From contig CM106586.1 of NCBI GenBank assembly GCA_048013815.1, positions 8,680,001-8,744,000 on the forward strand: a DNA stretch of 64,000 bases, written 5' to 3'. Source of the DNA: Setoptus koraiensis (taxonomy: Eukaryota > Animalia > Arthropoda). Made by a program: the position numbers and the translations under genes. Below, in pieces: positions 43,886 through 64,000 of the stretch (position 1 is the first letter of the stretch; each line of letters starts with the position of its first letter). The notes beneath the pieces are model-generated. The model made no database searches. It was not told the DNA's origin and was given only the letters and a program-made list of their open reading frames with translations.

Positions 43886-45204
43886 TGGCCGTTGTGGTGT
43901 CCTTTTTCATATGCTGGTCGCCCTTTCACGCCCAGCGCCTATTGGCTAGCTTCATGGCGAAAAGTCTGTCCCAGAGTCAATTCCTCATGGATATATATTT
44001 AAAATTGACATACATATCTGGTATAATGTATTATCTCAGCTCTACCATAAATCCAATTCTATATCAATTGATGTCGGCAAAGTTTCGTCTAGCCTTCAAG
44101 GAAACATTCAATTGTTCGCTATTTCAATGCTTGTCTCCAGCAACCAAAACAACCATGCCAGCAACAACAACAATTGCATCAGCAACCCAACCAACTACAG
44201 CCTCTACCAGGGCACTGGTGACAACAGCGAAAAATTTGGGCCTCAACAGCAAACAGCGGAAGCACAAAACAATAGCTAGCAATAATTTTTTGTGTAAGCA
44301 TATGGTCAAAAGTTATCATCAGCAGCAGGCCATCACGACGACTTGTTGTGTTTTAAACGCTGATGCCAACGACAACAACAACAAATCAGCATCATCTTGC
44401 GACCAACACAAAGTCATTCATTCTCTATTGGGCCCAACATTCTGGCCTAGCCGAATAAAACAACAAGTAAATCAGCAGCAACAGATCAAATCAAAAACAA
44501 TCATCATTGATAATGACATTGGTGGCCAGCAAAATGGTGACATTGGCGCCAATCACCAAGCGCCCCCCTCAACACCAACACCATTTTGTCATTCACTTGT
44601 GCATCATTCTAATTCAAATCAGCAAATAGGTAAGAAACTGTTGTGCTCAAATGGCCATCATCAATTGTCAATCACAAGCAACAATGATAATATCATGTCT
44701 CGATGGGGCAGACAATTGACCAGATCATTGAGTACGTTATTCAATAAGAACAAAAATGGCTTCAACAATCGTACATCGCTAATTAAGCCAAGCAATAGTT
44801 GTTGTTGCTGCCAGGGAAACGATTGTCCAATGAGTCAGCCCCTAATGAATCATTGCTCACTTATTGGTCTTGCGTCAAACAAAAATAATAACGACGATGA
44901 TGCCACCACCATCGTCAATTGTTGCCTTTCCAAGCAAAACAACATAGACAACATAGATCAACATCATCATCTCAAAAACAACACACCTCCACCACCACTA
45001 GCGTTGGATAATAATAATGACCCATCAGTTATCCAAGAAATGGCCAATGACACTATTGCCACTAATACTGTTACAGCTATCAACACCACTACTACCCCTA
45101 CTATTATTACTAATACTACTACCATTGCCAATGACCATCGAACAAATGGCCAAACCAATGGTAAAGTGGCCGAAATCAAATTGAATTATTTAAAAAGCTA
45201 CTAG
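43886..45204 (+). CDS. PRXamide GPCR coding exon 3 (TM6, TM7, helix 8, ~370-aa C-tail)
   Basis: [19 protein letters not shown] (CWxP), SGIMYYLSSTINPILYQLMSAKFRLAFKETF (NPxxY). TAG at 45202-45204; AATAAA at 45218 and 45233. Confidence 0.93.
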
Positions 45205-45285
45205 GTCCTAAAGTTATAATAAAATAAGTGGCAATAAATTTCTATAATAAGTAATAACTAATCATACATTTCATCATCAGACCAA

Positions 45286-46953
45286 TCAATCTGACCAGTC
45301 GTTTTCTTCGAAATCGTCCTCCTTCTTTGCAATGTTTCCTATAGGCGGCTTATCATTGAAATCCACAATTTTAGAAACGGCCGATATGAACATTCTTTCG
45401 TGTTCAACTCGACGACCATTCATATAGCCTGGCAGGTAATTGTTGTCCTCCTTTCCGGCATACTCTTGCAATTCTTGGATTCTAGCATTATGTTCTAAAT
45501 CGCGAATAAGGTCATGGCAAACATCGTCGCTTTCTTCAGATGGCTGCAAAGCAACACGGGCTTTCTTCAATTCGTTCTCAAGCTCGTTGTGTTGTTGGGA
45601 AAATGAGCCCAAATTAACATTATGCCGTTCAATTTTATTACCAATGATGGGATCCAATGACATTGTTGTCGTGAGTTGTTTTGTTGAATTCGATCCATTT
45701 AGCCAATCCTCCAAACTTATCAGACTGTCCGGCTTCATGACGTTCAAATACAATTCATCCTTGTAGCCCGTATCCAATTTGCTCGGCGCATAGTAACCTA
45801 ATGGAACAACCTTTTCTTCATTGTTGTTGGAATTTCCTGTCAATAATAATAATCTTGTTACCTCGTTCTCTTTTACACACAATGAACGAGTAGGAACTAG
45901 TGTCGCATCAATGATTCTCGATAAAACCGAAACTTGATTTGTTGTTGCGGATCGCTCTAGCGAATTGGGAATAAACTTGCTTTGGTAATCAAACATGGTT
46001 CTCAAGTTCACATGACTGACTAAAGAGTTGACAGTATCATTGGAGCTGACTATAAACAAAATATAGTTGGAAGTATCTACAATTGGTAACCAGACACCAC
46101 TCGAAGGCTGGGTGTCGATGATAGTCGACAATGGCTCGGTGGTGTTCCTGACATCCCAAAGATGTAGGCATTTTGTGCGCTTCTGTGTGTGTATACTCGA
46201 AATTACAAACGGAGTGTCTCCTAACCATTTCGTGTGGAATGTCTTAGCCGAATTCCAAGGAGAGTCTGACTTGAATCTTAGTTGATCATTCGACCTCATA
46301 TCTAAGATGCTAAGGGTATCGTCGGCTGCCACTGATAATGACGAAGCATCCAAGCACCAATCAAAAGAGTGGACATTTTTGAATTTGTTGCAACTCAAAA
46401 TGGGTATTTCAATCTTATTTAAGTCATGGACTAGTATTTCAGAGTTGTCAGCGACGCTCGATAGGCAGGTATCAACGATTGGATTGAATGCGATAAGTTT
46501 GCATTTTAAGCCGTCGAACGAGCTGACGCAATCAATTTTTTTAACACTTTGTGAGCGACAACCGTCCTGGTCGCAAGGTATGCGATAAAGATCTATTCCT
46601 TTCGTATTTCCTGAAGCCAAAAGACCATCATCGAAGGGCGAGAATGACACAGCTGTAATGGGCCGCGCAAGCTCCACTCTAGTTGGAATTGCGTCACATT
46701 TGGCGTTGACAGAATTTTCATCTCTTTGTAAATCTATTATGTCTAGTGACCTTTCTTTTGATCTAACCACGGCGAATCTTGCACTGGCAACTATTCTATT
46801 ATCCTTTGTTGTTCCGCAGTTCGGTTGTTGTAAACCAGAGTGAAAACTTGCATAATGATTTCCAATCTTGGCGATTATATTCTTAAATTTTGTCGCCTCT
46901 CTATTGGAGAAGAATGTGGTCGATGATGCAAAGTTTGAGGATAGAGTGGTCAT
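45286..46953 (-). CDS. Coronin-family WD40 protein, single propeller with coronin-7-like acidic C-terminus, intronless, 555 aa
   Basis: TKFKNI (coronin SKFRH-like start), ITAVSFSPFDDGLLASG, LHLWDVRNTTEPL, VPLGYYAPSK..YKDELY, ISLEDWLNG, terminal EDDFEENDWSD. In-frame TGA 6 codons upstream of the ATG. Confidence 0.75.
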   Translation of the reverse strand: MTTLSSNFASSTTFFSNREATKFKNIIAKIGNHYASFHSGLQQPNCGTTKDNRIVASARFAVVRSKERSLDIIDLQRDENSVNAKCDAIPTRVELARPITAVSFSPFDDGLLASGNTKGIDLYRIPCDQDGCRSQSVKKIDCVSSFDGLKCKLIAFNPIVDTCLSSVADNSEILVHDLNKIEIPILSCNKFKNVHSFDWCLDASSLSVAADDTLSILDMRSNDQLRFKSDSPWNSAKTFHTKWLGDTPFVISSIHTQKRTKCLHLWDVRNTTEPLSTIIDTQPSSGVWLPIVDTSNYILFIVSSNDTVNSLVSHVNLRTMFDYQSKFIPNSLERSATTNQVSVLSRIIDATLVPTRSLCVKENEVTRLLLLTGNSNNNEEKVVPLGYYAPSKLDTGYKDELYLNVMKPDSLISLEDWLNGSNSTKQLTTTMSLDPIIGNKIERHNVNLGSFSQQHNELENELKKARVALQPSEESDDVCHDLIRDLEHNARIQELQEYAGKEDNNYLPGYMNGRRVEHERMFISAVSKIVDFNDKPPIGNIAKKEDDFEENDWSD

Positions 46954-47874: not shown

Positions 47875-48361
47875 AAGAGAGCGAGGGAGAGAAAGAGAGA
47901 GTGCAGCGTGCTAAGGCAGTCGGCATCGTGTGCTCTCGCTTTGCCCTCTCGAATGGTTCGAGTCGAATGGAACAAAATCGGCAGCAGTGGAATTGCATCT
48001 GAACTGGGCAAATGTGTGAGTGGCTATGCGCGTACACACACACACACACTCACACTTTTGCTAGGCACACAAACACAACTGCTAGTACACACACACACAC
48101 ACAACGATCCGCATTATTATTATTTGGCCTATACGACGAATCGCACCAATTCAATATATAACATTTATTTATCATACTATTATCATTATTATTATCAATA
48201 TCATCTCATTTAGAATATCTTGAATGGAAGAAACATTCATATTCTTATTTGATTGATATTATTCATCAATTGTTGTGTACATTTATTATTATCACTCCTA
48301 TCGTCATCTGAAAATTTATATAAATCCACATACACACACATACACAATTGAAGGGAATACA

Positions 48362-50785
48362 ATGGACAATACTATTGAAGAATTCTTGGACGAACAATAT
48401 CAAATTCTTAGGCAACAAATTTTAGATGATCTACTAGAATTGTACTTTCTCAAAAGCAAGCAAGATGTTTACATGCACAACTATAAAGAATGGCGTAAGG
48501 GTGCCACCAATATCGAACAACAATTACAAGCTGATCTCGATGACAATGAGAGATTTTCTCAATTAATCACATTAAATGACCTGTCGCTTATTGCAAAACA
48601 ACACCCCACTGCGTTGGACCAGCAACCGATAGATCATCAACAACAACAATCAGAACAGACGCAACAGGAAGTGATTGAATCTTCGCAAGAAGACGGTTGC
48701 GCGCATACGACATTGACTAGCGGACAAAGTGCCTCCGCTGCTACTACTAACAACCAAAACACCACCGCCATCGCCGGCGATGCAGCCGGTTCTCTTTCAG
48801 CTACACAACCAAATCAGTCACCTAAATCTCAATCGCAGTCAGAATTGCTATCATCGCAACATCGGCCCCTATCCCCCTCCACCAGGCAGCAACATGCTGC
48901 CGCAACAAATCAAGTGGATGCAGTTGCAACTACCCCACAGCAACAGAAACAACTTAATTTGCAGCAAACACGACAACAACAATCTATTGAGACAGATCCT
49001 TCCAAGTTGCCACTTGACACCACCTCTTCTCAGCCTTCCTCACAACAGCAATCAGATTCACAAAAGAAAGAACAGCAAGCATCTCAGCACCTAGATTTAG
49101 ATTCACAAACAAGCGACAAAGAGTCACAACAAACCAAGCAGCATCCTAATAGTACAGCTGCACCTAAATCACCCGTCCGCATAGTGCTTGCGCAGCAGTC
49201 CTCTCAATCTATAGTCACACCTCAACAGCAGATTGCCCCTTCTAGGCGATTAGCAGCCTCACAAGTAACTCAGACACCCATCTCAGCCGTTACACCGCCC
49301 ACATCAAAAACACCACAATCTTCCATACAGCAAACTCTAACCGCTCAATCTTTCACGTCTACTCATCATACACACCAAATCACTCCAAGTGGCTACTCTA
49401 CCAGGCAGCATTCCATATCATCTGCTTGTGATAGTGCCATCGGTAGTCAACAAAAACAAATTGCAGAAAGGGCACTACATGAAGCTAATATTACAGCCAA
49501 AGTTGCCGAGCTAAGAAAGAAAGGTCTCTGGTCGCAGAGAAGACTACCTAAAGTTCAGGAGCCTTCGAGACCCAAAACTCATTGGGACTATCTTCTAGAG
49601 GAAATGGCATGGCTCTCCACCGACTTTGTAAATGAGCGGAGATGGAAGAAAAATGCTGCTAAAAAGTGTGCCAAGATGGTTAACAAATATCACCTGGATA
49701 AGAGGCTGCAAAAAGAACGCGCTGAACGTATGCACATCCAGCATCTCAAGCGTTTGGCGTCGCAGATGGCTAAAGAGGTCAGGATATTTTGGTCCTCTAT
49801 AGAAAAGGTTGTTGATTTCAGACAGCAAACAAAATTGGAAGAAAGACGAAAGAAAGCATTAGATTTACATTTGAAATTCATAGTTGACCAAACTGAGAAG
49901 TACTCTTCAGAAGTCCAAAAAGACTTGGCAAAATCCTTGCAAGTAGTAACAAACACTCCTGTAAATAGCTGCAACGTTAGTGAGAACGGACGAATGGAAA
50001 ATAGTCCAACAACACCTGCCCCAATAACTGATACCATCGACAGTAGTAAAGAACTGTCGAACCTAAGTGAAAGTAAAGGATTTGCTGACAAGAGGCCTCA
50101 TGATGCAAATGACGAATCTTTGCCCGAAAACGCCTGTCCGGAAGTCGATGAAATTGAAGACTCCCAAGTCGTTACCGAACCAAACGCTCCCGAGCCCTCT
50201 GCTAAAAGAATAAAACTGGAATCACAATATGATGAAGAATTCCAAGCTGATAGTCTTGATGAAGAATTCCAAGCTGATAGTCTTGACGAAGAAGATGATG
50301 AAAGTACAATTCAGAAAGAGGAGGAACTCTGCTCAGATTTGAACCACAAAGAAGAACTCAAAGATCTAGAGAACGAAGCAGACTTACCCATAGAAGAACT
50401 CATAAAGAAGTATGGTGGTGCTTATGAAGATTGTCCTAATTCGTTGAATACATCCTCTATTGAAGACGGAAGTAGTAACGGAGAGGAGACAATATCTGAT
50501 GACAGTAATGATAAAACTGCAGATAAAGAGGATGATACAGCTAGTGATAATGATGGTCAAGAAACAACTTCGACAACTCCGGTCGGAGATTTTGATAAAG
50601 AGTCTATAGATGATGGAGAAGCTACCGAAGATGAAGAATACTGCGATGATCAAGAATACGCTGATGACGAGGAAGAGGAAGAAGAGGTTGGAAATTCCGA
50701 CCATGATTCAGATATGACAGATGTTGGTCTAGAATATTTGATTGATCCAGAAAAAGATAACGGCGAAAAAGAATCTGTGATAAAT
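48362..50785 (+). CDS. dom: Domino/EP400 SWR1-family helicase, exon 1 (N-terminus, HSA domain, acidic linker)
   Basis: HSA-region AELRKKGLWSQRRLPKVQEPSRPKTHWDYLLEEMAWLSTDFVNERRWK. AAT|GTAAGT donor at 50786 (phase 0). Start ATG 48362 is inferred. Confidence 0.92.
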
Positions 50786-51041
50786 GTAAGTACTTTCATT
50801 CTTTTACCACACATTGGCTCTCAACGCCCCTTACTCATGTCCTAACAGGTGTTTGAAGGGTTTATTAGAAGGCCTATATCGATCTGCTGAGTCTACTGTC
50901 TTAAAACATCTTGTGAAGATAAATTCAACACTTTTCGAGAAACCTGGACGTAGATACAAACTTTTCTCAAGTTTCATAACAGAATTTAATACAGAGCATC
51001 AATTAATCTAACTAATGTATTTTCGTTGCTCTTATTCACAG

Positions 51042-51263
51042 GAGGCCGACGAAAACTCGCCAACTAAGAAGACTGGTAAAAGGAAAATTCAAGACATAGC
51101 GGCTGGCGCTGAAAGTATTCAACCGAAAGGAAATACATTGGAGACGGCTACTGTTTGCACAAAAGTGCCTCCACTTCTGAAGCATACTCTTCGCGAATAT
51201 CAGCATATCGGTCTTGATTGGCTTGTTGCAATGTACAACAAGAAACTCAACGGTATACTTGCT
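51042..51263 (+). CDS. dom: Domino exon 2
   Basis: cacAG|GAG acceptor; IQDIAAGAESIQPKGNTL...LREYQHIGLDWLVAMYNKKLNGILA; GCT|GTATGT donor. Confidence 0.93.
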
Positions 51264-51356
51264 GTATGTATGAAGATTTTTATCATCCCCCAACTCTTAA
51301 AAAAATTCAGAGCTTATCTTCTCATCGAAATTTTTCACTTGACTATTTGTTTTTAG

Positions 51357-51560
51357 GATGAAATGGGTTTGGGTAAGACCATCCAGACGATAGCTTTACT
51401 TGCACATCTCGCATGTGAACGTTCTGATTGGGGGCCCCACCTAATAGTAGTACCCACAAGTGTCATGTTGAACTGGGAGATGGAATTCAAAAAATGGTGT
51501 CCAGCATTTAAAATTCTCACCTACTATGGAACTCCAAAAGAGCGTAAAGCCAAAAGAACG
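51357..51560 (+). CDS. dom: Domino exon 3 (Walker A)
   Basis: tttAG|GAT; [20 protein letters not shown]...[24 protein letters not shown]; ACG|GTATTG donor. Confidence 0.95.
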
Positions 51561-51787
51561 GTATTGTATCTATATTTTAGTATTTTCCGAAACAAGAGTC
51601 GCTTGATTTCTGTGAATTAATATGATTCAAGTGCTGTATTGGATTTCGAAAAACACATTTGCTCTGAATGCGCCGTGCTTGTTATTCATTATCAAGTGGG
51701 GTCACAAACAATGAGCTACAGACCTTAAAACTAGTTTAGTTCATGTCTTACTAATCAATTCATTCTCTATTTCTTCAACTATTTCAG

Positions 51788-54388
51788 GGTTGGTGTAAAC
51801 CTAACAGTTTCCATGTCTGTATCACATCCTACCGCCTGGTAGTTCAAGATCATGGAGCTTTCCGACGCAAGAAATGGAGATATTTTATACTCGATGAAGC
51901 ACACCATATAAAGAACTTCAAGTCACAAAGGTGGCAGATGCTACTTAACTTCAATAGTCATCGTAGACTTCTTCTAACCGGTACACCTTTGCAGAACGAT
52001 CTCATGGAACTATGGTCACTAATGCATTTTCTCATGCCCAGCCTCTTCGACTCGCATCGTAAATTCAAGGATTGGTTTGTCAACCCAGTCACAGGAATGA
52101 TCGAAGGCAACTCTGAAATCAACGAAACATTGATTCAACGACTGCACATAGTTCTGAGACCCTTTTTGCTGCGTCGATTGAAATGTGATGTTGAGAAACA
52201 GTTGCCGCACAAGTACGAACACATAGTGAGATGTCGACTATCCAAAAGGCAAAGATTCTTGTACGAAGAATTCATGTCTTTGGCCAATACTAAAGAAACA
52301 CTAGCCAAAGGTAACTTTTTGAGCGTCATCAACGTTTTGATGCAGTTGAGGAAGGTTTGCAACCATCCTAACCTCTTCGAGCCCAGGCCCATAGTATCCC
52401 CTTTCATGATGAAGAGCATCGACTTTAAAGTTCCAGGTATCGTCCTAACGCCGACAGACTACAACTCTGAGCAGCATGTTAATTTAAGCAGCCTGCAGCT
52501 CATGATATCTGAAATAAATCTCGCACTATCTTCTAGCGCGCACGCTCTCATTGAAAAGCATCAAATCCCTAGAAAACTAATTGAAGAGATCCCGTCATCA
52601 GATGACATCTTCCCGGAAACGCTTCAGTCAGAAATGAGTCCATCCACCGATGTTGACAACGATTCGGATGAGCTCTTGGATATTGATTGCTTTCTCACTG
52701 ACCCCAGGTTCGATCATATAGATGTCTGCAGCAAAAGACTCGAATCACACAGAGACAAGCTTTCATTCATGGCCAGTATCAATGAACGACGTTGCAAGAT
52801 ATATCCATACTATTATAGAGACTGCATAGATTCATTGTCTTTCGTTGATGCGATAGAGAAACTCTTCAAGAACAAAGAATCTTCTGTGATAAATGATTTT
52901 GGCTGTGGTACCGGCTACCACCTCTGCAATTTATTCAACCATTTGAAAACATTACCTAAGTATGACCTAACTCAGGTATCTACTGTACTCAAAGCTGCAA
53001 TCAAATCCCCCAATGAAATACTTGAAGCAATGGATGAAATCTTCAAACGATTTGTTATTTGTGTGCCTGGTGTGAGTGCTCCTTCAATCAATCTGCACGT
53101 TACGCACATGTCACCATCGAAGAAAGCTGATGATCTATGTTTACGTGAAACACTGCACTCTGAGCTCGCTCCATGTTTCAACAGCTTAGGCCAAATTATG
53201 TCCAACATGCGAACATCTTTTCCCGAGTTAAGACTAATTCAATATGACTGCGGTAAACTGCAAACACTAAGCGAACTTCTTTGGAGCCTGAAGAGTGGAT
53301 CTCACCGAGTACTAATCTTTACTCAAATGTCCAGAATGCTCGATATTCTTGAACAATTTCTCAACTATCACGGACACACCTACTTACGACTCGACGGATC
53401 AACAAAAATCGACGAAAGGCAGGTTCTCATGGAACGTTTCAACAATGATAAGCGAATATTCTGTTTCATACTTTCAACTCGTTCTGGAGGTGTTGGTGTT
53501 AATTTAACAGGTGCCGATACTGTTATTTTTTATGACAGCGATTGGAACCCGACCATGGACGCTCAAGCTCAAGATCGTTGTCACCGCATAGGTCAGACAA
53601 GAGACGTCCATATATACCGTCTAATTAGTGAAAGAACGATAGAAGAAAATATTCTCTCCAAAGCACGTCAAAAGAGGCTCCTCGGAGATGTCGCCATAGA
53701 AGGTGGCAACTTCACTACCGCTTTCTTCAAGAAACAAGCCATCCAAGAGTTGTTCTGCCTAGAAGAGGACAAAAACTTCAACCCTAATTCAGATGCAAGA
53801 TCTTCCAATAAATCTCAGCAAGACTTGGAAGCTCCTCCCATTGATTCGTCTCAAGATCCAAATGTTAAAACCAAAGTCGAGACATTACCCAACGGTAACT
53901 GTGATCAAGATTTGGTGGACGTTTCCAAACTCGAGATGGCATTATGTAAAGGCGAGGCCGAAGCTGGTGAAAAGATGGATGTTGAAGCTGTCACAGCAGC
54001 TACTGAAGATGCTGCCACTGAGTTGATGGAATTTGACGAAAATGTACCATTGGACGATGAGAGTAAAGTAGTTGACTCAATTGATCCTGACTCTTTGGAT
54101 GTTGAAACTAAGTTGAAGATGTTAGTCGACCAAATGAGACCCATCGAGAAATACGCTATCAATTACCTCGAGACTTTGCACGAATCTGTCAACTCTGAAG
54201 AGCTTAAGCAAGCTGAAGAAGAACTAGAGGCCCAAAAACGAGACTGGGAACAGAATCGGATCGATCTTCTGAAAAGTGAAACTTTACAACTTGACGTGAG
54301 CGAAACTCTGTTAACATACCCTAAAGACGCCAAGTGTAAACAGGTATATTATTCTGTCAATGGAAGAAGAGGCATAGATGAGATGCCG
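51788..54388 (+). CDS. dom: Domino exon 4 (DEAH box, split ATPase insert, helicase C-lobe)
   Basis: ttcAG|GGT; LDEAHHIKNFKSQRW, LLTGTPLQN, LRKVCNHP, IQYDCGKL, LSTRSGGVGVNLTGADTVIFYDSDWNP, QAQDRCHRIGQ; CCG|GTAAGT donor at 54389. Confidence 0.96.
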
Positions 54389-54493
54389 GTAAGTTGAAGT
54401 CAAAGATAGAAATACTTGCATGCATGTTTATGCCTTGATACTATATTCAGATATTTATTAACATACAGTTGACGGTCTTAACGCAACCTGCAG

Positions 54494-56590
54494 ATATGGG
54501 CCCCGCTAACGCCACCAACAACACCACAAAACCCCGCCGAAAGTAGTTACTTCAGCACGGCTACATCTATGATGACTCCCGCCATGGCTGCCAGGATTAC
54601 CGCCATGGGTGGAGTTGCAGGGCTTGGATTTAACACCGGATCTCATGCTAACCATATCATCAATGAGAAGGATCTTCATGTGGATCATATCTATGATTTT
54701 CTATATGAGCCCAATGTTATGCTAGAATCTCAGTTGCCAGCTGTGTGTCAACCTCCTACTCTTACGGAATTAGGTGGATTCTCGATGAGCTACAAAAGGA
54801 CCAAATACAACCAGAATCCCACCCTATCCAGCATGCTTCTGCAACAACAACAGCAGCAAAATCAGCAACAACAGCAAGTCCAACAACAACAGCACCAACA
54901 AAAGCCGACGCAACAAGTTCAGCAACAACAGTTACAGCAACGGCAACAGCAACAAGACCAACAAAACCAACTCCAGCAGCAGCAACAAAATCAGCTGTTG
55001 CTCCAACAACAACATAACCAACAACAGTTGCATAATCAGCAGCATCATCAGATGCAACAGCAGCAACAACAGCAACAACAGCATTTGCAACTGCAACAAC
55101 TAACGCTATCACAATCACCTCACCTCAGCACTCAACTCCAACCTTCAGTTTCCGCAACTAGTTTGAATCTCTCTTTGAATCCCGTTCAAAGAAAACCCAA
55201 GATTAGAAGAGATGAGATCATATGTCTACCCAAGTCGTTGTTTGACAGGCAATCAAGCAACTTTGCTAAAATTCGTCGGGAATTGAAATTGCAGAAATTG
55301 AGATGTGTTACACGAGGCAATGATACAGACCCATTTGCGATGCAAAAATTCTTTCATAATTTCTCCATCAATCCTCTTGGTCAAACTTCGCAACCCTCGG
55401 CTATCATGAATCAATTGAATAAGCAGCCCAATCTTCCTATGTTGCAACTGCAACAAGAGCAATTGCCCCCGTGGTCGGTTCACGAAGAGTGGGCCACACT
55501 TTTGGTCATCCAACATCTGCAAGATTTGCCAATTAATCTCTGTCTTCTCACACCAGGTCACACTCCTAATTTTGACTTTGTTTCAGATGTTGTATCTAGT
55601 GTGAGCTTTGTATTTCGAAACACCTCTATGTGCTCGTACCACTATGAAACTGTGGTACAGAAAAGAGAAATGAGCAAAGAGATGCCTTCTCTTGATATAT
55701 CATCGCAAACATCAGGAAGTCTTACACCAACTCAACCGCCTGCTAAAAAATCTAAGAAGATGAAGAATCAGACTAATGGTCAGCAAACAATAACCTCATT
55801 TATGCAGACTCCAACTACCCCTATACCCAATGCTATTAGCACATCAAAAAATATCAACTCATCTCAGATCATCCCTTTCAAACCTTCTCAAACTGGAACA
55901 CTGTTTGCGAATGATAAATCCTTCCAACTATCGTGCGTTTATCGTTATGGTATTATAAACAGAATACGAGAGCGACGTCCTCCTACGATAAAGACTCGAT
56001 TCAGTGGTATTGGTGCGGCTGCCAAGCATACAAAGAATATCCAACTCTTGCAAGAGAGTAGGATCAACTATGAACGGCCATTGACACCTATGCAAGTCAC
56101 TTCAAATGGAGTTGTCAAGGCCAGGAATGCCCGGCAAGCTCACAAGAGCCATGATGTAGTTAATCGAGTGGCTATGGCTCAAGATGCTGCCACTGCCTCA
56201 GCATCTAGTCAGCAGAGACAACAATTGCAGACCTCTCAGCCTGTCCATCAAAGTGCTCACACAGTGGCTGTTCAGCAGTCCCTTGGTTTACACCTCATCT
56301 CCCAGCAGCAATATCATATGACTACCCAACAACAACAACAGCAACAACAGTATCATATTACTACCTTACAACAACAGCAACAACAACAATTGCAGCAACC
56401 TCAGTCTCAACAGCAGCAACAACAATTGCAACAACCTCAGTCTCAACAACAACAGCAACAACAACAACAGCAACAACAATTGCAACAACCTCAGTCTCAA
56501 CAACAACCACAGCAACAACAGCAACCACCGCAGCAATTCATTTCTTTGCAGGCGCACAAGTCTGAATCTTATGATCGAAATTGTCGATGA
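54494..56590 (+). CDS. dom: Domino exon 5 (polyQ tracts, SANT/Myb-like domain; DomA/EP400-type C-terminus)
   Basis: cAG|ATA gives EMP-IWAPLTPP; LYEPNVMLESQLPAV; PWSVHEEWATL...PGHTPNFDFVSDVV. TGA at 56588-90 followed directly by AATAAA at 56591. Total CDS 7548 nt (~2515 aa). Confidence 0.88.
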   Translation: MWAPLTPPTTPQNPAESSYFSTATSMMTPAMAARITAMGGVAGLGFNTGSHANHIINEKDLHVDHIYDFLYEPNVMLESQLPAVCQPPTLTELGGFSMSYKRTKYNQNPTLSSMLLQQQQQQNQQQQQVQQQQHQQKPTQQVQQQQLQQRQQQQDQQNQLQQQQQNQLLLQQQHNQQQLHNQQHHQMQQQQQQQQQHLQLQQLTLSQSPHLSTQLQPSVSATSLNLSLNPVQRKPKIRRDEIICLPKSLFDRQSSNFAKIRRELKLQKLRCVTRGNDTDPFAMQKFFHNFSINPLGQTSQPSAIMNQLNKQPNLPMLQLQQEQLPPWSVHEEWATLLVIQHLQDLPINLCLLTPGHTPNFDFVSDVVSSVSFVFRNTSMCSYHYETVVQKREMSKEMPSLDISSQTSGSLTPTQPPAKKSKKMKNQTNGQQTITSFMQTPTTPIPNAISTSKNINSSQIIPFKPSQTGTLFANDKSFQLSCVYRYGIINRIRERRPPTIKTRFSGIGAAAKHTKNIQLLQESRINYERPLTPMQVTSNGVVKARNARQAHKSHDVVNRVAMAQDAATASASSQQRQQLQTSQPVHQSAHTVAVQQSLGLHLISQQQYHMTTQQQQQQQQYHITTLQQQQQQQLQQPQSQQQQQQLQQPQSQQQQQQQQQQQQLQQPQSQQQPQQQQQPPQQFISLQAHKSESYDRNCR

Positions 56591-57390: not shown

Positions 57391-58228
57391 ATGGATGAGT
57401 ATATGCCCATTATTTACGGAGGCAAAAAAGTATCCATGTTTTGGACAACGGTTCAAGTTATGATGGCCTTCCTAATAGCTGGCTTTGGCAACGTTGGTGC
57501 GGGTATCATTTTAGACTTTGTTCAACAATGGCAGGTATTTATAAATGTGCGAGAACTATTTGTTCTTATACCCTCATTATTGGGCCTCAAGGGGAACCTA
57601 GAGATGACAATGGCCTCACGTTTATCAACACAAGCCAATTTAGGTCACATGAACAACAACAAGGAACTTTGGAAGATGGCTAAAGGTAATTTAGCTTTGG
57701 TACAGTGCCAAGCGACAGTGGTATCATTTGTTGTAGCAATATTTGCTTGTACAGTTAATTCAATGTCATCAGGTGAATCGTTTGATTACAACAATGCCAT
57801 AATATTGTGCGCCTCTAGCCTGTTAACTGCCAACATTGCCTGTTTCTTATTGGGATCAGTCATGATATTGGTCATTGTGTGGTCGCATAAGATTAATATT
57901 GATCCGGACAATATTGCGGCCCCTGTTGCTGCCTCGTTAGGCGACATGACAACAGCCGGACTTTTGGCTTTATTTGCTCATATAATATATGAGTATAGCT
58001 ACAATCAGAGTATGCCTTATTTGGCTCTATTTATAACAATAGCCTTCCTACTAATGCTACCTGTTTGGATCTATATAGCCAGAAAGAATGCCTACACAAG
58101 CGACGTAATCACTAAAGGATGGACACCGATAGTGATAGCGGTTTTAATTTCATCATGTGGGGGCTTCATACTGGATTATGGAAAGTCGTTATACAGTCGA
58201 TTGCCCGTCTTTCAGCCAGTTATCAATG
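57391..58228 (+). CDS. SLC41A1: SLC41/MgtE-family Mg2+ transporter, coding exon 1
   Basis: IPSLLGLKGNLEMTMASRLSTQANLG (PX6GN), IDPDNIAAPVAASLGD; G|GTAAGT donor at 58229 (phase 1). The ATG 57391 start is inferred; a possible 5'UTR intron spans 57037-57305. Confidence 0.92.
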
Positions 58229-58733
58229 GTAAGTTTTTGTGTGATTTTATTCATAACCATGGAATCATGTGTATCGGTTGTTATGTGAGTTTGTTTAAAG
58301 AGGTTTCCCATCGCTACGGATACACGCTATAATCTAGAAAACCACAACAACATTACTAGTAGTAGGCGGTGATTTTCCATAGAGTTTTCCAGCAAAACTT
58401 TCGACAACGCCGGCCCTTCACTTGGATAATTACGATACTCGTTGATTGAGCTAATATTATCTGATTGATTATTTGAATGACGACAATGACGATAATTGCG
58501 TTGACGATCATACGACTAGTGTCTGAGTGTGTGTGTGCATGATAATAATCTTCGACTGATGGTTTGACGACATTGCCACCGCCACAACAAACAAGCGACA
58601 TCTGCTACACTAAATTGCTATTGTATATAGAGCTCAAGTATTGTTGCCCGACAATAATTGACAGTACACTTACTCATACCTCTTATTGATCATCATCATC
58701 ATTTTGTATTCACTTTTCATTGTAACGCTCTAG

Positions 58734-59020
58734 GTGTGGGTGGTAACATTGTAGCCATCCAGGCTAGCCGTCTCTCCACCTCGCTACATCGTGATGGAAA
58801 ACCAGGGGAACTCGATCCACAATTCAAGGTGTTCACTGGGCCACTGGCACTCTTCTTTGGTCCGCCCGACGCGAACAGGTCCACAGCTAGATCATTGCTT
58901 CTTATGTCGCTGCCTGCCCATGTGATTTACTTTTATGTTATACATTTCATCCAGGGACAAAATTCGGTGGATGTGACATTTGTGTTCCTGGGCCTCTACT
59001 TGACAATGGCCATTATTCAG
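58734..59020 (+). CDS. SLC41A1: SLC41 coding exon 2
   Basis: ctAG|GT restores [32 protein letters not shown] donor at 59021. Confidence 0.93.
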
Positions 59021-59218
59021 GTAATTGAGAGGCGCACACAATTAGTGAAAACAACAATGACGCACACGCGGCACGTTACTAGTTGATTTGTTAGTTCAAA
59101 GTTTTTATTTGTATTGGGACACTTATCACAAACTAAACCGTTTCGTCTTTCTCCTCCTTATGCATGACAATTTACATTCAACAATATCATAATACCAATG
59201 GCGTTTGTTTGGAAACAG

Positions 59219-59404
59219 GTGGCCATCCTATTGTACTTGGCACAGAATCTGGTCAACTCATTGTGGTGGTGCGCCATTGATCCAGACAACTATTCTACGC
59301 CAATTTTAACTGCGGTTGGAGATCTATTGGGTTGCGCCTTCTTGTTGGCAGTATTCCTACTGTCCGCTCAGCTAGGAGATCCAAACGCGTCCACAATCAT
59401 TTAA
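59219..59404 (+). CDS. SLC41A1: SLC41 coding exon 3
   Basis: acAG|GTG; [19 protein letters not shown]; TAA at 59402-59404. Spliced CDS 436 aa. Confidence 0.92.
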
Positions 59405-59675
59405 CCGTCTGAGGAGAAACCAATATGATACCATCACCACGAATAAACATCAATGGCACATTCCTCTTACTCTGCTTGTAGACCCTCTCCAAAGTTTCTT
59501 CGTCTATCTCAACCGAGGTGCATACTTCTTCGGCGTTCTCTAGTACCATGTTGAGATGTTGATCGTAAGCGTGTAGTCTTCCTTTCAGTTCGCGATCGCT
59601 TCGTAACTTGACATAGATCTCCTGGTCCAAACTTAGCCTGATGAGATCAAGGGGTTGCTCAATGGTTTCGTGCAT
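59397..59675 (-). CDS. LSm3: U6 snRNA-associated Sm-like protein LSm3, intronless CDS, 92 aa
   Basis: [40 protein letters not shown] (Sm1), [22 protein letters not shown] (Sm2); TGA at 59399-59397. Confidence 0.97.
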
Positions 59676-62600
59676 TCTGATCTATGTGTATGGTTGGTGA
59701 TTTCGGGGGGGCCAAATGTGAGTGATCTGTTGTCTGTTAGTACAATTGTTAAAATGTAGTTCCGGTATTAGTTAAAAAGCGTGTTGACACTGGCGTGAAT
59801 TTTTAATGATTAAAAAGATGATGATAATGAGATGAGATAACAAGTTGAAATGTGTGTATGGAAACTGGTGACATTTGTTTGTGTTTATATCCTCAAATTT
59901 CGTTGTCTGGCACTGCACAGAAGGGGCACACGGAGCACAGTTAGTAAGTAAATGTCAGGTTTGGAGCGTGTGGGAAGCCGCCACAGAGTTGAACATGCTC
60001 ATGAATAGTGTTTCACATAATCAAGACATTTCGCTGCAATGGCTGTTTATTTGTAAGTGCATAAGTGGCACACAACGTTGCTGTGTGCGTATTTACGTGT
60101 TTGTGGTGCGGCGGGCATGTTCGTTCGCGTGCTAATTGGGGACAATGGCGCCAAATACAAACAGAAAAAAGAATAAAACTTTCAATAGACAGACCCCACA
60201 AAGCGCGCCAGGAACAGTGCACCAGAAATGCAGACGGAAATTGTTGTCGAGCTTACCAGCTATCTGGGTGGCTATACGGTGCGCTCTGGCACGCTTAACC
60301 ATAGTGTAATCCGATTAGAGACAGAGACGTAACATTGGACGTGTTGGTTGGCGGTGAGCGAATCGCGCAAAGATTAAGGATTGGAAATGACACACACACA
60401 CGCACAATAAGTTTGATAAGTTAGCCAGAACCGCAAAGATAGCTAGGCTACACCGAATGGGGGAGCTTGATAGGCTGCGCAATGTCAATTGATTACCAGA
60501 AGCCACTCAAGTAATTATACAAGCTCGCGCCGAGCGCAAGAGATAATAATCTAATTTGTTTAATTCGCGCGTTCGCTCACTGTTTTCAGCGGTGGCAATT
60601 TTTCGTTTGTGTTGGCGCTACAACAATCGTCGTCGCCACCAACAACTTGATCTGGTTGCTCGGCAAGATTGGCTCACAACGTCAGGCTCAGGTGGTAACG
60701 ACGAGTAATGAGTGAGTGTGGGCTCCGTTGTCACTTGCTGTTGTCACGGTGGTTAGTGCGCACTTGAGTGCGGTCACAACCGGTCGGCCCGACAACTGTG
60801 AGTCGGCCAAGTTTCGCCGAGGCCGCTCGCGTCGTCGGGCCGTTTCCCGAGCCTCGCAACCAGTTGACCGTCGGCTGGTTCGCTGGCTCGCTGGTTCGTC
60901 CGCTGGCTGGTTCGAGCGTCGGCTCGCTCGAGCAGCGGCCGGTTCGAGCAGCGGCCGGTGGGCCAGTGGAGCGCAATGTCGAGAGTCAGCGTGGGACGGG
61001 AAGCTAACGTTTGGCTGTATCGCTTTTTGCTGTCGCCTGGTCGCGGCCGACAGAGCCGTTTGGTTGCTGGTTGCGGGTCGCGGCCGGCAGAGCCGCTCGG
61101 TCGCTGGTCGGTGGCGCTGACTGCGCCACTGAATTCAAAGTAGCCCAAATTCAAAGAGTACGCTAATAACGCGCGCGCGCCAGACAATTTCCAGCTAGCG
61201 ATCCGGGCATCAGCATTTAGCGCAAGTACTAGAAGCCAAAACACAAAGTATATCCGTGGCGCGGTACGGCTGAGATGGCTATTGGGAGCAGACGACACAC
61301 GGAGCTAGATGAGTGAGACAGTGCCGAAGCAACGCCAATGAGCAATGAGCGCGGGGGTGCGCGGGGATTCGCGTAGGCGGCCCCGTCTGCATGAGCTGAC
61401 GATGGGGCCCCCATTCGCTGGCACAACCGGTCGGCTTGGCTTCGGCATGCGTGTGCGTGTTTGTGTGCGTGTGTGTGCGTGTGTGTGTGTGTAAGCCGTT
61501 CTTTGATATATACCTATTTTCGTGAGCCCGGGCAAGATTGCTTCCAGTGTGTGTGTGAGTTAGTGTATGTGTCTCACCTTGAGCCTCGCTGCCAGCAAAG
61601 AACGGGCCCCAGTAATAGTGGGGCCCACACACACACACACACAGACAGCGCGAAACAGCAACAACAACAACAACAACGACAGCAGAAGCGACAACTACAA
61701 CAACAACAACTTGTCATTGCACATCTTCCGTTAGCTGGCGAGCTGTACTGTTTTGGCTGGCTGGCTGGCTGGCTGGCTGTGCAGTGCGTCGGCACGCCAG
61801 CCGGGCGAGCTAGTGTCTGGCCAAAGAATCGCGCCAGCCGTAGCAGCATCATATAGTGCTCAAGTTGACATACTTACGCCGGCCAACTGAGGCCCGCCAA
61901 GCCAACAGCGATACACAGAGGAAGTAACAACGTGTGTGTGTGTGTTATATCGAGCGCAAACTAACCGACTTTTTGCAAATTTGCTATTTGTTGAGTCGGC
62001 GACACTGAAAGTCACACACGCGCGCGCACACGTTAATGGCGGCACGGGGGCGCCGCCAAGTGACAAGCATATTTTTTACACCTGAGGGGAGCGGGCCCGA
62101 GACACGAGGAGCGGGCGCGCACGCGAGCAAGCGGCTCGTTAAATATTTGTTTTAAGTATGTAACAGCGCCACTGTTGCATAATCAGTTGCTGCATCATAC
62201 ACGTGTTGTGCGCAACACGCGCCCGGCCAATCAGTCGGCCGGGCGCCGAGTCGACGCCGTGTCATCGTCCGCTCTAGCTGCCGAGTCGCCCGCTGTCGGG
62301 CAATCGGTGGGCCGGTGCGGCCCGGAGTGTCCGCTGCGAGAGTCGGCGGCGGGTGTTGGCGGCGGGTGTAAGCGGCAATCGCTCAGTTGTCGCTGCCGGG
62401 TATATTGTCCACTGTCGTCGTGTGATGTCGTGTGCCGTTGTGGCGCTGTCGTCGCCCGGCGTGAAACCGGCCACGAACGGGCCCGCGCGGGTTTAGTGGC
62501 AGCGTGTCCAGGCGAGCCGCTATCGCACAGACGGACGCACAGGTGACCGGTGTGACGGGCACGGGCAGGGGGCAGTCGCGCACAAGTGCCTGAATGTGTC

Positions 62601-64000
62601 TTGTTGCCGTGGCCGGCCGCCGGTGTCGTTGCATGCCGGTCGTTTAGTTTTATTTCAAGGTGCCCGTGCACCAGCTCACACGCTAGCTGGTCGGCTGTGA
62701 TGATATCTTTTTCAGTGCACAGTGTGCGCGGTTTGCGCAATGTGCACTGAAAAAGCGCTGGCGCGGGGCCCCTGCAGCAAGGCCGCTGAGCACAAGTGTA
62801 AACTTGTTTTTTGGCTGGCCGCGCTGTGCAGGCTCGCGCTGGCCACTGCTCACTTGTCAAGATTGCCGTTGCACTTGTTTGCAGTTGTCTCCCGCTCCGG
62901 TGTGCGTGTGTGTGTGTGCGTGCGTGTGCCGATACAAACACGCCGGAAAAAGGATCCCCCGGGCGACCCGACCGGCCGCGACCGGCCCCAACTGGCCCCA
63001 ACTGGCCCCAACTGGCCGCGACTGGCCGCGACTGGCGAGCCGAGCCCGCCAGTCGGCACGTCGTGTTTGTTGATACAGACAGGCTGCAGACGGACGGACG
63101 CTCGCACGGCTCCACAGAGACTGGCGCGGCGAGCCGGGCAACCGGGCCAGCGAGCCAGAGCGTAAAAATTGTAATTGGCGAGCCCCGGATAAAAATTCAA
63201 TCCCTTGGCCGGCGCGCAGTGTCAATGTTTATGTTGTGCGTGTGTGTGTGTGTCGGCCGTTATGGCGAGCCGCGCCGCACGACAACAATGCTCGCCATTC
63301 GGCACACTGTTCATCGGCCGCGATTATTATTCGGGGCCCTCGATCGGGCGCTCCACGGGGCCGATCGGGCGCTCGACGGGGCCGATCGGGCGCTCGATGG
63401 GGCCGATTCGGCCGGGCCCGCCATGAGCCAGATACGAGCAACGAGCGTGGCCAACTGGCCAGCGACTGGACGGGCCGCTGGCTGGACGTGAGACGGGCTC
63501 GCAGTTGACCAGTGGCTTGCCAGCGGCGCACGATAAAAGTCGCACAATGTAACACGCAGCGCACACACAGTACATATGCCGTGAGCGTATATCGTGTATG
63601 CATGTGCCGCGCGCGCCACAATGGCGTGGCCGTACATTGTGCGCCGAGGCGCCACTGGGCTGATTGGGGCCCCGGCGGCCCGGTCGGCTGGCTGGGCCCT
63701 AGCGCTAAGCTTAGTTAGCGCTATCAGAACGCACTATTAAGCGTCCCCGCACAACAACAGCAACAACAACAGCGGCAGTGGCAACAGCAACAACAACAGC
63801 GCCACCAACAGCAACAACAGCGGCGCCAGCAACAACACCCACACATGGCTCGCTTGATAATGGCGAACGGTGATGGTCGGTGACCTCATTCCCGGGCAAT
63901 CGATGCCCCCCATCTCTGGCTGTTGTGGGTGCTGGCGCCAGTTTGCAGCGCTGGCACAACTGGCACCGCTGGCACCACTGGCGCTATTGGCACCGCTGAC

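What the first reader, a model, noticed from the sequence alone, without database searches (positions are those of the whole stretch)
59397..59404. Tail-to-tail coding overlap of SLC41 and LSm3 (8 bp)
SLC41 ends ..ACA ATC ATT TAA (59402-04) while LSm3 ends ..GTT AAA TGA on the minus strand (59399-97), so two conserved metazoan CDSs overlap. Each mRNA's 3'UTR must be antisense to the other's coding exon, a phage-like compaction with potential for dsRNA formation or transcriptional interference.
Basis: seen in the sequence. Interest (0 to 1): 0.78.

Follow-up and report, generated by a model that had tools for sequence, protein, structure and literature searches.

The report
Interlocked SLC41 and LSm3 gene ends
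In this mite genome a magnesium-transporter gene and a splicing-factor gene on opposite strands really share their last 8 bases; related mites carry the same interlocked pair, mostly with a 32-base overlap, so it is an old feature of a known kind, not an error.

Summary
The last exon of an SLC41/MgtE-type gene (+ strand, stop TAA 59402-59404) and an intronless LSm3 gene (- strand, stop TGA 59399-59397) overlap by 8 bp. Both proteins end where their orthologues end.

A close relative, about 10% diverged in DNA, keeps the identical overlap, so an assembly indel is unlikely.

The convergent pair is syntenic in 14 further distinct loci of eriophyoid-type mites:
- 32 bp overlap in nine
- 47 bp overlap in one
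- 8 bp overlap in one (the close relative)
- separated by 63 bp and 327 bp in two
- LSm3 gone in one, leaving a roughly 30-nt fossil of its 3' end

In every overlapping lineage the LSm3 Phe-Ile codons are TTT-ATT. Their antisense is AATAAA, 14-41 nt after the SLC41 stop. Both separated lineages have lost this hexamer.

In the window the first AATAAA after the LSm3 stop is 288 nt downstream. It sits in a conserved island inside SLC41 intron 2.

No RNA evidence could be obtained, so overlapping transcripts, dsRNA and interference remain inferences.

Whether 8 bp is a relaxed 32 bp overlap (24-nt duplication) or its precursor is unresolved.

Unchecked earlier notes from this scan list other convergent coding overlaps in the same genome.

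Verdict: a new member of a known kind, of moderate interest.

The parts
57391..58228 (+). SLC41 exon 1. It runs from the first in-frame ATG to the G|GTAAGT donor and holds the first MgtE domain.
   Evidence: homologues. An unseen upstream exon is not excluded.
58734..59020 (+). SLC41 exon 2, from the acceptor ..ctag|GT to the donor CAG|GTAATT. It holds the first part of the second MgtE domain.
   Evidence: The same intron position is implied by gene calls that run on past ...LQVS in several relatives.
59021..59218 (+). SLC41 intron 2 (GT..AG, 198 nt).
59095..59141 (-). Conserved island inside intron 2. It carries the first AATAAA downstream of the LSm3 stop (59109-59104 on the - strand) and is the candidate LSm3 3'-end signal.
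   Evidence: 87% identity to L001, against 41-43% in the flanking intron. AATAAA lies at +288. No Rfam match reached the threshold and folding was not above shuffles.
59219..59404 (+). SLC41 exon 3, the terminal coding exon, ending ..GDPNASTII, stop TAA 59402-59404.
59397..59404 (.). The 8-bp stretch shared by the two coding sequences (TCATTTAA on the + strand).
   Evidence: identical in L001
59397..59675 (-). Intronless LSm3 coding sequence, 92 aa, ending ..[16 protein letters not shown], stop TGA 59399-59397.
59442..59447 (+). AATAAA 38 nt after the SLC41 stop. It is formed by the antisense of LSm3 codons TTT-ATT (Phe-Ile) and is the candidate SLC41 poly(A) signal.
   Evidence: Present in all 12 overlapping lineages and in the L017 fossil. 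Destroyed in the two non-overlapping lineages.
59405..59428 (.). 24 nt present here and in L001 (27 nt there) but absent from the 32-bp-overlap species. It encodes LSm3 residues IILVSPQT. The adjacent 59381-59404 encodes the SLC41 tail PNASTII-stop. In the other species a single 24-nt stretch does both jobs.

Best explanation
This is a genuine convergent gene pair whose coding ends interlock. The SLC41-type magnesium transporter gene (three coding exons, + strand) and the intronless LSm3 gene (- strand) are both intact. Each ends at the position usual for its family, and they share 8 bp (shown).

The arrangement is inherited. The same pair lies tail to tail across eriophyoid-type mites, mostly with a 32-bp dual-coding overlap (shown).

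Because no intergenic DNA exists, each gene's 3'-end processing signal sits inside the partner (inferred from conservation). SLC41 would use the AATAAA written on the antisense of the LSm3 Phe-Ile codons. LSm3 would use an AATAAA in a conserved island of SLC41 intron 2. Its 3'UTR of about 300 nt would then be antisense to the whole last SLC41 exon.

If so, the two transcription units overlap by about 380 nt, and their mature mRNAs are complementary over about 250 nt (inferred, no RNA data).

The overlap also makes the pair hard to separate by rearrangement. That would explain its conserved adjacency in a group reported to have little conserved gene order (inferred).
For: - Sequence and ORFs. 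Domain identities. Named orthologues.
- The LSm3 tail [13 protein letters not shown] matches the metazoan pattern GDGVILVSPPxRxG in length and content. The SLC41 tail ..GDPNA.. matches outgroup mites.
- The identical 8-bp overlap is in L001.
- The same convergent pair is seen in 14 further distinct loci, counting L001. The overlap is 32 bp in L002, L005, L007, L010, L013, L015, L016, L018 and L020, 47 bp in L014 and 8 bp in L001. There is a 63-bp gap in L009 and a 327-bp gap in L012. LSm3 is gone in L017.
- Both frames are under selection in the 32-bp overlap. LSm3 VILLS is invariant where the SLC41 tail varies. SLC41 DP[YF]A is invariant where the LSm3 tail varies. Stop positions are conserved.
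- Poly(A) signal: the TTT-ATT codons are fixed in 12 of 12 overlapping lineages, while 6 of the 8 wobble sites in that stretch vary. The hexamer is lost in both separated lineages. It is kept in L017, where LSm3 itself is gone.
- The intron island is 87% identical against 41-43% in its flanks.
- Synteny with the upstream domino/SRCAP-like SNF2 gene is conserved.
Against: - There is no transcript evidence at all. Three raw RNA runs gave zero reads, which is no test because the organism was not shown to be in them. One possibly-RNA contig set was fragmentary.
- AATAAA use has not been demonstrated in this group here.
- LSm3 could use a non-canonical signal closer to its stop, for example AATAGA at +69.
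- The intron island could serve SLC41 splicing rather than LSm3 3'-end formation.
- The poly(A)-signal codon argument rests on related lineages, which are not independent samples.
- The SLC41 N-terminus may be incomplete.
Confidence: 0.75

Rival explanations
1. Annotation artefact. One of the two coding sequences really ends elsewhere, through an unrecognised splice donor before the stop, an alternative terminal exon, or a shorter LSm3. The coding overlap would then not exist in mature mRNAs.
For: No cDNA or RNA-seq could be laid on the locus. The SLC41 gene has introns, so alternative 3' exons are conceivable.
Against: Both tails end at family-typical positions. The MgtE profile runs through exon 3 to position 124 of 125. 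In relatives where SLC41 is one uninterrupted ORF, the same tail and an even longer overlap are found. Stop positions are conserved in 10 of 10 (SLC41) and 9 of 10 (LSm3) lineages.
Confidence: 0.07
2. An assembly or sequencing indel near 59400 creates a false frame and a false overlap.
For: A single-base indel would change which stop is read. The window is one assembly.
Against: An independent contig from another sample, about 10% diverged in DNA, has the same frames and the same 8 bp. Runs from four studies hold 97-100% of the sampled words. Protein tails are of canonical length.
Confidence: 0.02
3. The overlap is a selected regulatory device. Antisense pairing or transcriptional collision couples expression of the Mg2+ transporter and LSm3, and this, not neutral loss of spacer plus lock-in, is why it is conserved.
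For: Adjacency and overlap persist across many lineages whose flanking genes differ. Convergent yeast genes with short spacers form mRNA duplexes with regulatory effects (PMC6993858, listed).
Against: - The overlap length changes (8, 32 and 47 bp).
- The overlap has been undone at least once (L009, and possibly L012).
- LSm3 has left the locus in L017 with SLC41 intact.
- I know of no functional link between the two proteins.
- There are no expression data.
Confidence: 0.12
4. The LSm3 copy here is a processed retrocopy or pseudogene that happens to abut SLC41, and the working LSm3 lies elsewhere.
For: It is intronless. In L017 LSm3 is absent from this locus, so another copy must exist in that species.
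Against: The ORF is intact and 97% identical to L001. The core is invariant across lineages at this same locus. More than 75-80% of eriophyoid genes are intronless anyway (PMC7738191; bioRxiv 10.64898/2026.08.24.746826). I did not search the rest of this genome for a second LSm3.
Confidence: 0.04

Closest known systems
Convergent cis-natural antisense gene pairs of animals (tail-to-tail 3' overlaps, common in Drosophila and mammals; e.g. PMC1449890, PMC3689595)
   Same: Two protein-coding genes on opposite strands whose 3' ends overlap, so that their transcripts are partly complementary.
   Different: In animals such overlaps usually involve UTRs only (from general knowledge). Here the stop codons and coding bases are shared, 32-47 coding bases in relatives, and each poly(A) signal appears to lie in the partner's codons or intron.
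Gene overlap in streamlined eukaryotic genomes (Giardia, microsporidia, Theileria; PMC6545626, PMC7641422, PMC4761415)
   Same: Spacer loss forces 3'-end signals and transcripts into neighbouring genes. An intron may be retained because it carries the partner gene's sequence, as proposed for Giardia.
   Different: This is a metazoan, and the locus is not uniformly compact. The pair is traceable as one orthologous overlap across many species, with different overlap lengths.
Eriophyoid mite genome streamlining (Aculops lycopersici, PMC7738191; Floracarus perrepae preprint 10.64898/2026.08.24.746826, which counts 369 overlapping annotated gene pairs)
   Same: The same group of animals, judged by the SLC41 tree with Aceria tosichella inside the clade. 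Overlapping gene models are already counted there.
   Different: In the passages I searched, those papers give counts only. The searches found no description of a conserved dual-coding overlap, codon-embedded poly(A) signals or the loss and relaxation series seen here.
Convergent yeast genes forming mRNA duplexes (PMC6993858)
   Same: A short or absent spacer between convergent genes gives complementary 3' ends with possible post-transcriptional effects.
   Different: In yeast the coding sequences themselves do not normally overlap. No duplex evidence exists here.

Membership tests
LSm3 (Sm-like protein, PF01423) | A single Sm/LSM domain covering nearly the whole protein of about 90-105 aa | tested here: met
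   PF01423, E 5.7e-20, residues 12-88 of 92.
LSm3 (Sm-like protein, PF01423) | Closest named relatives are LSm3, not other LSm or Sm paralogues, and the tail follows RGDG[VI]ILVSP | tested here: met
   Named hits are all LSm3, at 68-74% identity. Tail comparison.
SLC41 / MgtE-type divalent cation transporter | Two MgtE integral-membrane domains (PF01769) in one polypeptide | tested here: met
   Exon 1 covers profile 1-124. Exons 2 and 3 cover profile 5-80 and 79-124. This was tested exon by exon; the joined protein was not built or searched.
SLC41 / MgtE-type divalent cation transporter | Orthology to named SLC41 proteins | tested here: met
   Named hits are SLC41A1- or SLC41A2-like proteins of mites, ticks and insects. 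The window sits in a 100%-supported clade with Aceria tosichella SLC41.
Convergent overlapping (cis-antisense) gene pair | Opposite strands, 3' ends facing, shared bases | tested here: met
   conserved in L001 and 10 further lineages.
Convergent overlapping (cis-antisense) gene pair | Both genes transcribed, with transcripts that overlap | tested here: inconclusive
   Read laying returned no reads from three RNA runs and only fragments from a fourth.
Dual-coding (antisense) region under selection in both frames | Residues conserved in each frame beyond what the other frame imposes | tested here: met
   This holds for the 32-bp overlap of relatives, where the invariant segments are complementary. 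For the window's 8 bp only the two stop codons and two or three residues are involved, so the test is trivial there.

The most novel reading that the evidence does not exclude
The 8-bp overlap is the scar of an older 32-bp dual-coding overlap. That overlap was relaxed by a 24-nt tandem duplication of the shared segment, giving each gene its own copy of its tail (59381-59404 for SLC41, 59405-59428 for LSm3), followed by a new LSm3 stop.

Small duplications would then be a recurrent way for animals to undo coding overlaps. L009 shows an independent case: both of its tail-coding stretches align in register to the single stretch of L002, with p no higher than 0.001.

Synonymous codons of one gene (LSm3 TTT-ATT) would be held fixed only to serve as the partner's poly(A) signal.

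The opposite polarity for the window, an 8-bp state ancestral with a 24-nt deletion creating the 32-bp state, is not excluded.
Probability: 0.4. Interest if true: 0.6.

Novelty: new member of a known kind. Interest (0 to 1): 0.4.

Why it matters
Coding-coding antisense overlaps between conserved housekeeping genes are uncommon in animals (from general knowledge). This one can be followed as a single orthologous locus through more than a dozen mite lineages. The states seen are 47, 32 and 8 bp of overlap, secondary separation, and loss of one partner with a retained fossil.

That makes three things observable:
- how two proteins share codons, since each gives way where the other is constrained;
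- how synonymous sites can be frozen by a signal for the gene on the other strand;
- how overlaps are made and undone.

It also warns annotators of eriophyoid genomes that real gene ends can overlap, and that a 3'UTR can lie in a neighbour's coding sequence.

For the window itself the finding is ordinary in kind: a real, inherited overlap and not an error.

Tried and rejected
- **RNA support.** The look-up of sequencing runs found no RNA holder. Read laying on three raw RNA runs that share a species label with partial holders gave zero reads. One possibly-RNA contig set gave only three fragments.
- **Metagenome scans.** The first scan, with a single protein, found nothing. The second, with an alignment, gave three useful loci.
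- **A structured RNA in the intron island.** No Rfam match reached the gathering score, and the best E-value was 0.96. Folding gave a z-score of 0.27. Rejected.
- **Direct DNA paralogy of the two 24-nt units in the window.** Local alignment was not above shuffles (p 0.34). The left unit against L002 was only p 0.08. The duplication cannot be shown from the window alone.
- **Rooting the mite clade to fix polarity.** The 46-row quick tree puts L012 (327-bp gap) outside everything. The cleaned 21-row careful tree puts window plus L001 outside (90/96), with L012 nested on a long branch. The AU test does not reject the former (p 0.19). Unresolved.
- **Residue-based polarity arguments.** The window's tails are closer to the canonical forms, which favours '8 bp first'. 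The SLC41 tails ASTII and ASTIV look homologous, which favours '32 bp first'. My rough estimates make the two arguments about equally strong.
- **Joined SLC41 protein.** All work on the spliced model was exon by exon.

Full report
**What is there**

- A + strand ORF ends ACA ATC ATT TAA, with TAA at 59402-59404.
- A 92-aa - strand ORF (59675..59397) ends GTT AAA TGA, with TGA at 59399-59397.
- The two share 59397-59404, which is 8 bp.

Pfam assigns the - strand ORF to LSM (PF01423, E 5.7e-20). It assigns three + strand ORFs to MgtE (PF01769). The first carries a whole domain. The second and third carry profile positions 5-80 and 79-124 of a second domain.

Canonical splice sites join them in frame. 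Exon 1 is 57391-58228 (donor G|GTAAGT). Exon 2 is 58734-59020 (acceptor AG, donor CAG|GTAATT). Exon 3 is 59219-59404. The total is 1311 nt, or 436 aa.

I kept the spliced model in pieces throughout. Every search and tree used single exons by reference, and the joined protein was not built.

**Are both genes complete?**

Word-based protein searches name the relatives LSm3 (68-74% identity) and SLC41.
- Across 120 LSm3 hits the tail after RGDG is almost always [VI]ILV[SA]PPxRxG. The window's [10 protein letters not shown] has the same length and the same start.
- Outgroup mite SLC41 proteins end ..[IL]GDPN[AST].. plus a few residues. The window ends [10 protein letters not shown].

So neither gene is extended into the other. 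The spacer between two normal-length genes has simply gone.

**Not an assembly error**

LSm3 and SLC41 of the nearest relative lie on one Logan contig, L001 (LSm3 97% and SLC41 94% aa identity). That contig has the same three-part SLC41 end and the same 8 shared bases. This holds even though LSm3 carries an extra codon a few bases away and the intron is mostly unalignable.

Runs from four studies hold 97-100% of the sampled 31-mers of 58600-59800.

**The pair in other mites**

SLC41 relatives on long contigs were fetched until the look-up cap, plus one metagenome scan. Every locus except one has LSm3 convergent on SLC41. Flanking genes differ between loci. An upstream domino/SRCAP-like SNF2 gene is shared by the window and several loci.

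Measured states:

| State | Loci |
|---|---|
| 32 bp overlap | L002 (=L003, L004), L005 (=L006), L007 (=L008), L010 (=L011), L013, L015, L016, L018 (=L019), L020 |
| 47 bp overlap (LSm3 stop lost, five extra residues) | L014 |
| 8 bp overlap | window, L001 |
| 63-bp gap | L009 |
| 327-bp gap | L012 |
| LSm3 absent | L017 |

In L017 the SLC41 tail is the 32-bp type. It is followed by about 30 nt that still align to the LSm3 3' end and then to nothing. A tblastn search finds no LSm3 on the contig.

The SLC41 tree places all these loci, and Aceria tosichella, in one clade with full support. That clade is separate from oribatid, trombidiform and spider-mite sequences. This agrees with unchecked earlier scan notes that the genome is eriophyoid-like.

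**Both frames are coding in the 32-bp overlap**

Across ten lineages LSm3 reads V-I-L-L-S without exception. The SLC41 residues opposite vary (L/T/V/Q, I/T/V, V/E). A few bases further on, SLC41 reads D-P-[YF]-A without exception. The LSm3 residues opposite vary (T/M/S/L/E, G/D, R/H).

The SLC41 stop is in place in 10 of 10 and the LSm3 stop in 9 of 10.

In this phase each gene's wobble base faces the other's second codon base. Silent drift in the more constrained gene therefore shows up as amino-acid change in the other. That is the pattern seen.

**3'-end signals (inference from conservation)**

After the SLC41 stop, the only AATAAA or ATTAAA within 120 nt is at +38 in the window (59442-59447) and +41 in L001. 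It is at +14 in every 32- or 47-bp locus. It is the antisense of the LSm3 codons TTT-ATT (Phe-Ile before RGD).
- Among the eight wobble sites of that stretch, six vary among ten lineages. The neighbouring Val codon shows all four bases.
- The two that never vary are the two inside the hexamer. The window and L001 agree.
- The two lineages with separated genes have lost it: TTT-GTC in L009 and TTC-ATT in L012.
- L017, which lost LSm3, has kept it.

For LSm3, most 32-bp species have AATAAA at +27, written on the antisense of SLC41 Phe-Leu-Leu codons. L005 and L007 lack it.

The window has no such site. The first AATAAA is 288 nt downstream (59109-59104, - strand), inside SLC41 intron 2. It lies in a 47-nt island (59095-59141) that is 87% identical to L001, while the intron on either side is 41-43% identical. 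No known RNA family and no unusual folding explain the island.

The simplest reading is that the LSm3 3'UTR runs antisense through the whole last SLC41 exon and ends in its intron. On the same reading, the SLC41 3'UTR covers the last 20 or so LSm3 codons.

**What could not be shown**

No RNA evidence was obtained. Transcript overlap, duplex formation, small RNAs and interference are therefore inferences from geometry.

The A. lycopersici genome paper reports no clear R2D2 or AGO2 homologues. It suggests an absent or non-canonical siRNA pathway (PMC7738191). If general in the group, that would lower the cost of convergent overlaps. I did not test this in the present genome.

**How 8 relates to 32**

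The window and L001 have 24 nt (27 in L001) that the 32-bp species lack. Both proteins nevertheless have tails of the same length in both groups. In the 32-bp species a single stretch encodes LSm3 VILLSTHT on one strand and SLC41 P[YF]A[LS]T[IV][VE]-stop on the other. In the window two adjacent stretches do these jobs separately.

Two routes fit:
- A 24-nt tandem duplication of the shared stretch, followed by a new LSm3 stop (32 to 8).
- A 24-nt deletion that made each gene read the other's antisense (8 to 32).

Evidence for the first route:
- The SLC41 tails look homologous. The window has DPNASTII and P0148 has DPFASTIV.
- L009 shows such an un-overlapping elsewhere. Both of its tail-coding stretches align in register to the single L002 stretch (p no higher than 0.001). 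Both its proteins carry the 32-bp-type residues. It groups with 32-bp species in the larger tree (90).

Evidence for the second route:
- Both window tails are closer to the canonical forms (LVSP, GDPN).
- The cleaned tree puts window plus L001 outside all other lineages (90/96).

The window's two units are not detectably similar to each other (p 0.34). The root of the clade is not settled. I leave polarity open, leaning slightly to the duplication route.

Further unchecked notes describe other convergent coding overlaps here. I used them as leads only.

**Comparison with what is known**

Convergent antisense gene pairs are common in animals. Coding overlaps with signals embedded in neighbours are typical of streamlined eukaryotes (papers listed).

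For eriophyoids, genome streamlining and intron loss are described (PMC7738191). A 2026 preprint counts 369 overlapping annotated gene pairs in Floracarus perrepae and notes little conservation of gene order (10.64898/2026.08.24.746826). Term searches of those two papers did not turn up a locus-level analysis like the one above.

The window's finding is therefore a real new example of a known kind. The family-wide series around it is the more interesting part.

**Verdict**

Novelty: new member of a known kind. Interest: 0.4.

Noticed in passing
L017:2040-2140: In this relative LSm3 has left the locus. About 30 nt of its 3' end remain after the SLC41 stop, including the AATAAA. The SLC41 tail is still the type found in 32-bp-overlap species, so this is a fossil of the overlap.
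   Followed up: partly
L009:5490-5660: SLC41 and LSm3 are separated by 63 bp, yet both tails carry the residues typical of the 32-bp overlap. Both tail-coding stretches align in register to the single stretch of L002. This looks like a secondary un-overlapping by duplication and insertion.
   Followed up: partly
L014:5552-5598: The LSm3 stop is lost and the protein is extended by five residues, lengthening the overlap to 47 bp.
   Followed up: partly
window 48275-56590: A domino/SRCAP-like SNF2 gene lies in several ORFs: HSA domain at 48275-50845, and SNF2 plus Helicase_C at 51938-54397. The Gln-rich ORF 54569-56590 has no Pfam hit but is 48% identical (E 7e-95) to the ORF in the same position in L002. 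It may be the C-terminal part of that gene. The block SNF2-SLC41-LSm3 is syntenic in several relatives.
   Followed up: partly
window 60500-64000: There is a sharp rise in G+C, to 0.58-0.66 from 0.37-0.46 over the genes. The stretch has CA/TG-rich runs, no convincing long ORF with a Pfam hit and no Rfam match. It is unexplained, and it shows that the locus is not uniformly compact.
   Followed up: no
window 45204-45286: Another convergent pair, a 7tm_1 receptor ORF ending at 45204 (+) and a 555-aa ORF ending at 45286 (-), is separated by only 81 bp. Their 3'UTRs probably overlap as well.
   Followed up: no
SLC41 intron 2 position (window 59020/59021): Gene calls of several relatives (P0123, P0125, P0130, P0135, P0137, P0141, P0146, P0147, P0150, P0152) run on past ..LQVS into junk, which implies the same intron. 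Other lineages (L002, L005, L007, L009, L010, L012, L013, L018) have one uninterrupted ORF. Intron presence varies within the clade.
   Followed up: partly
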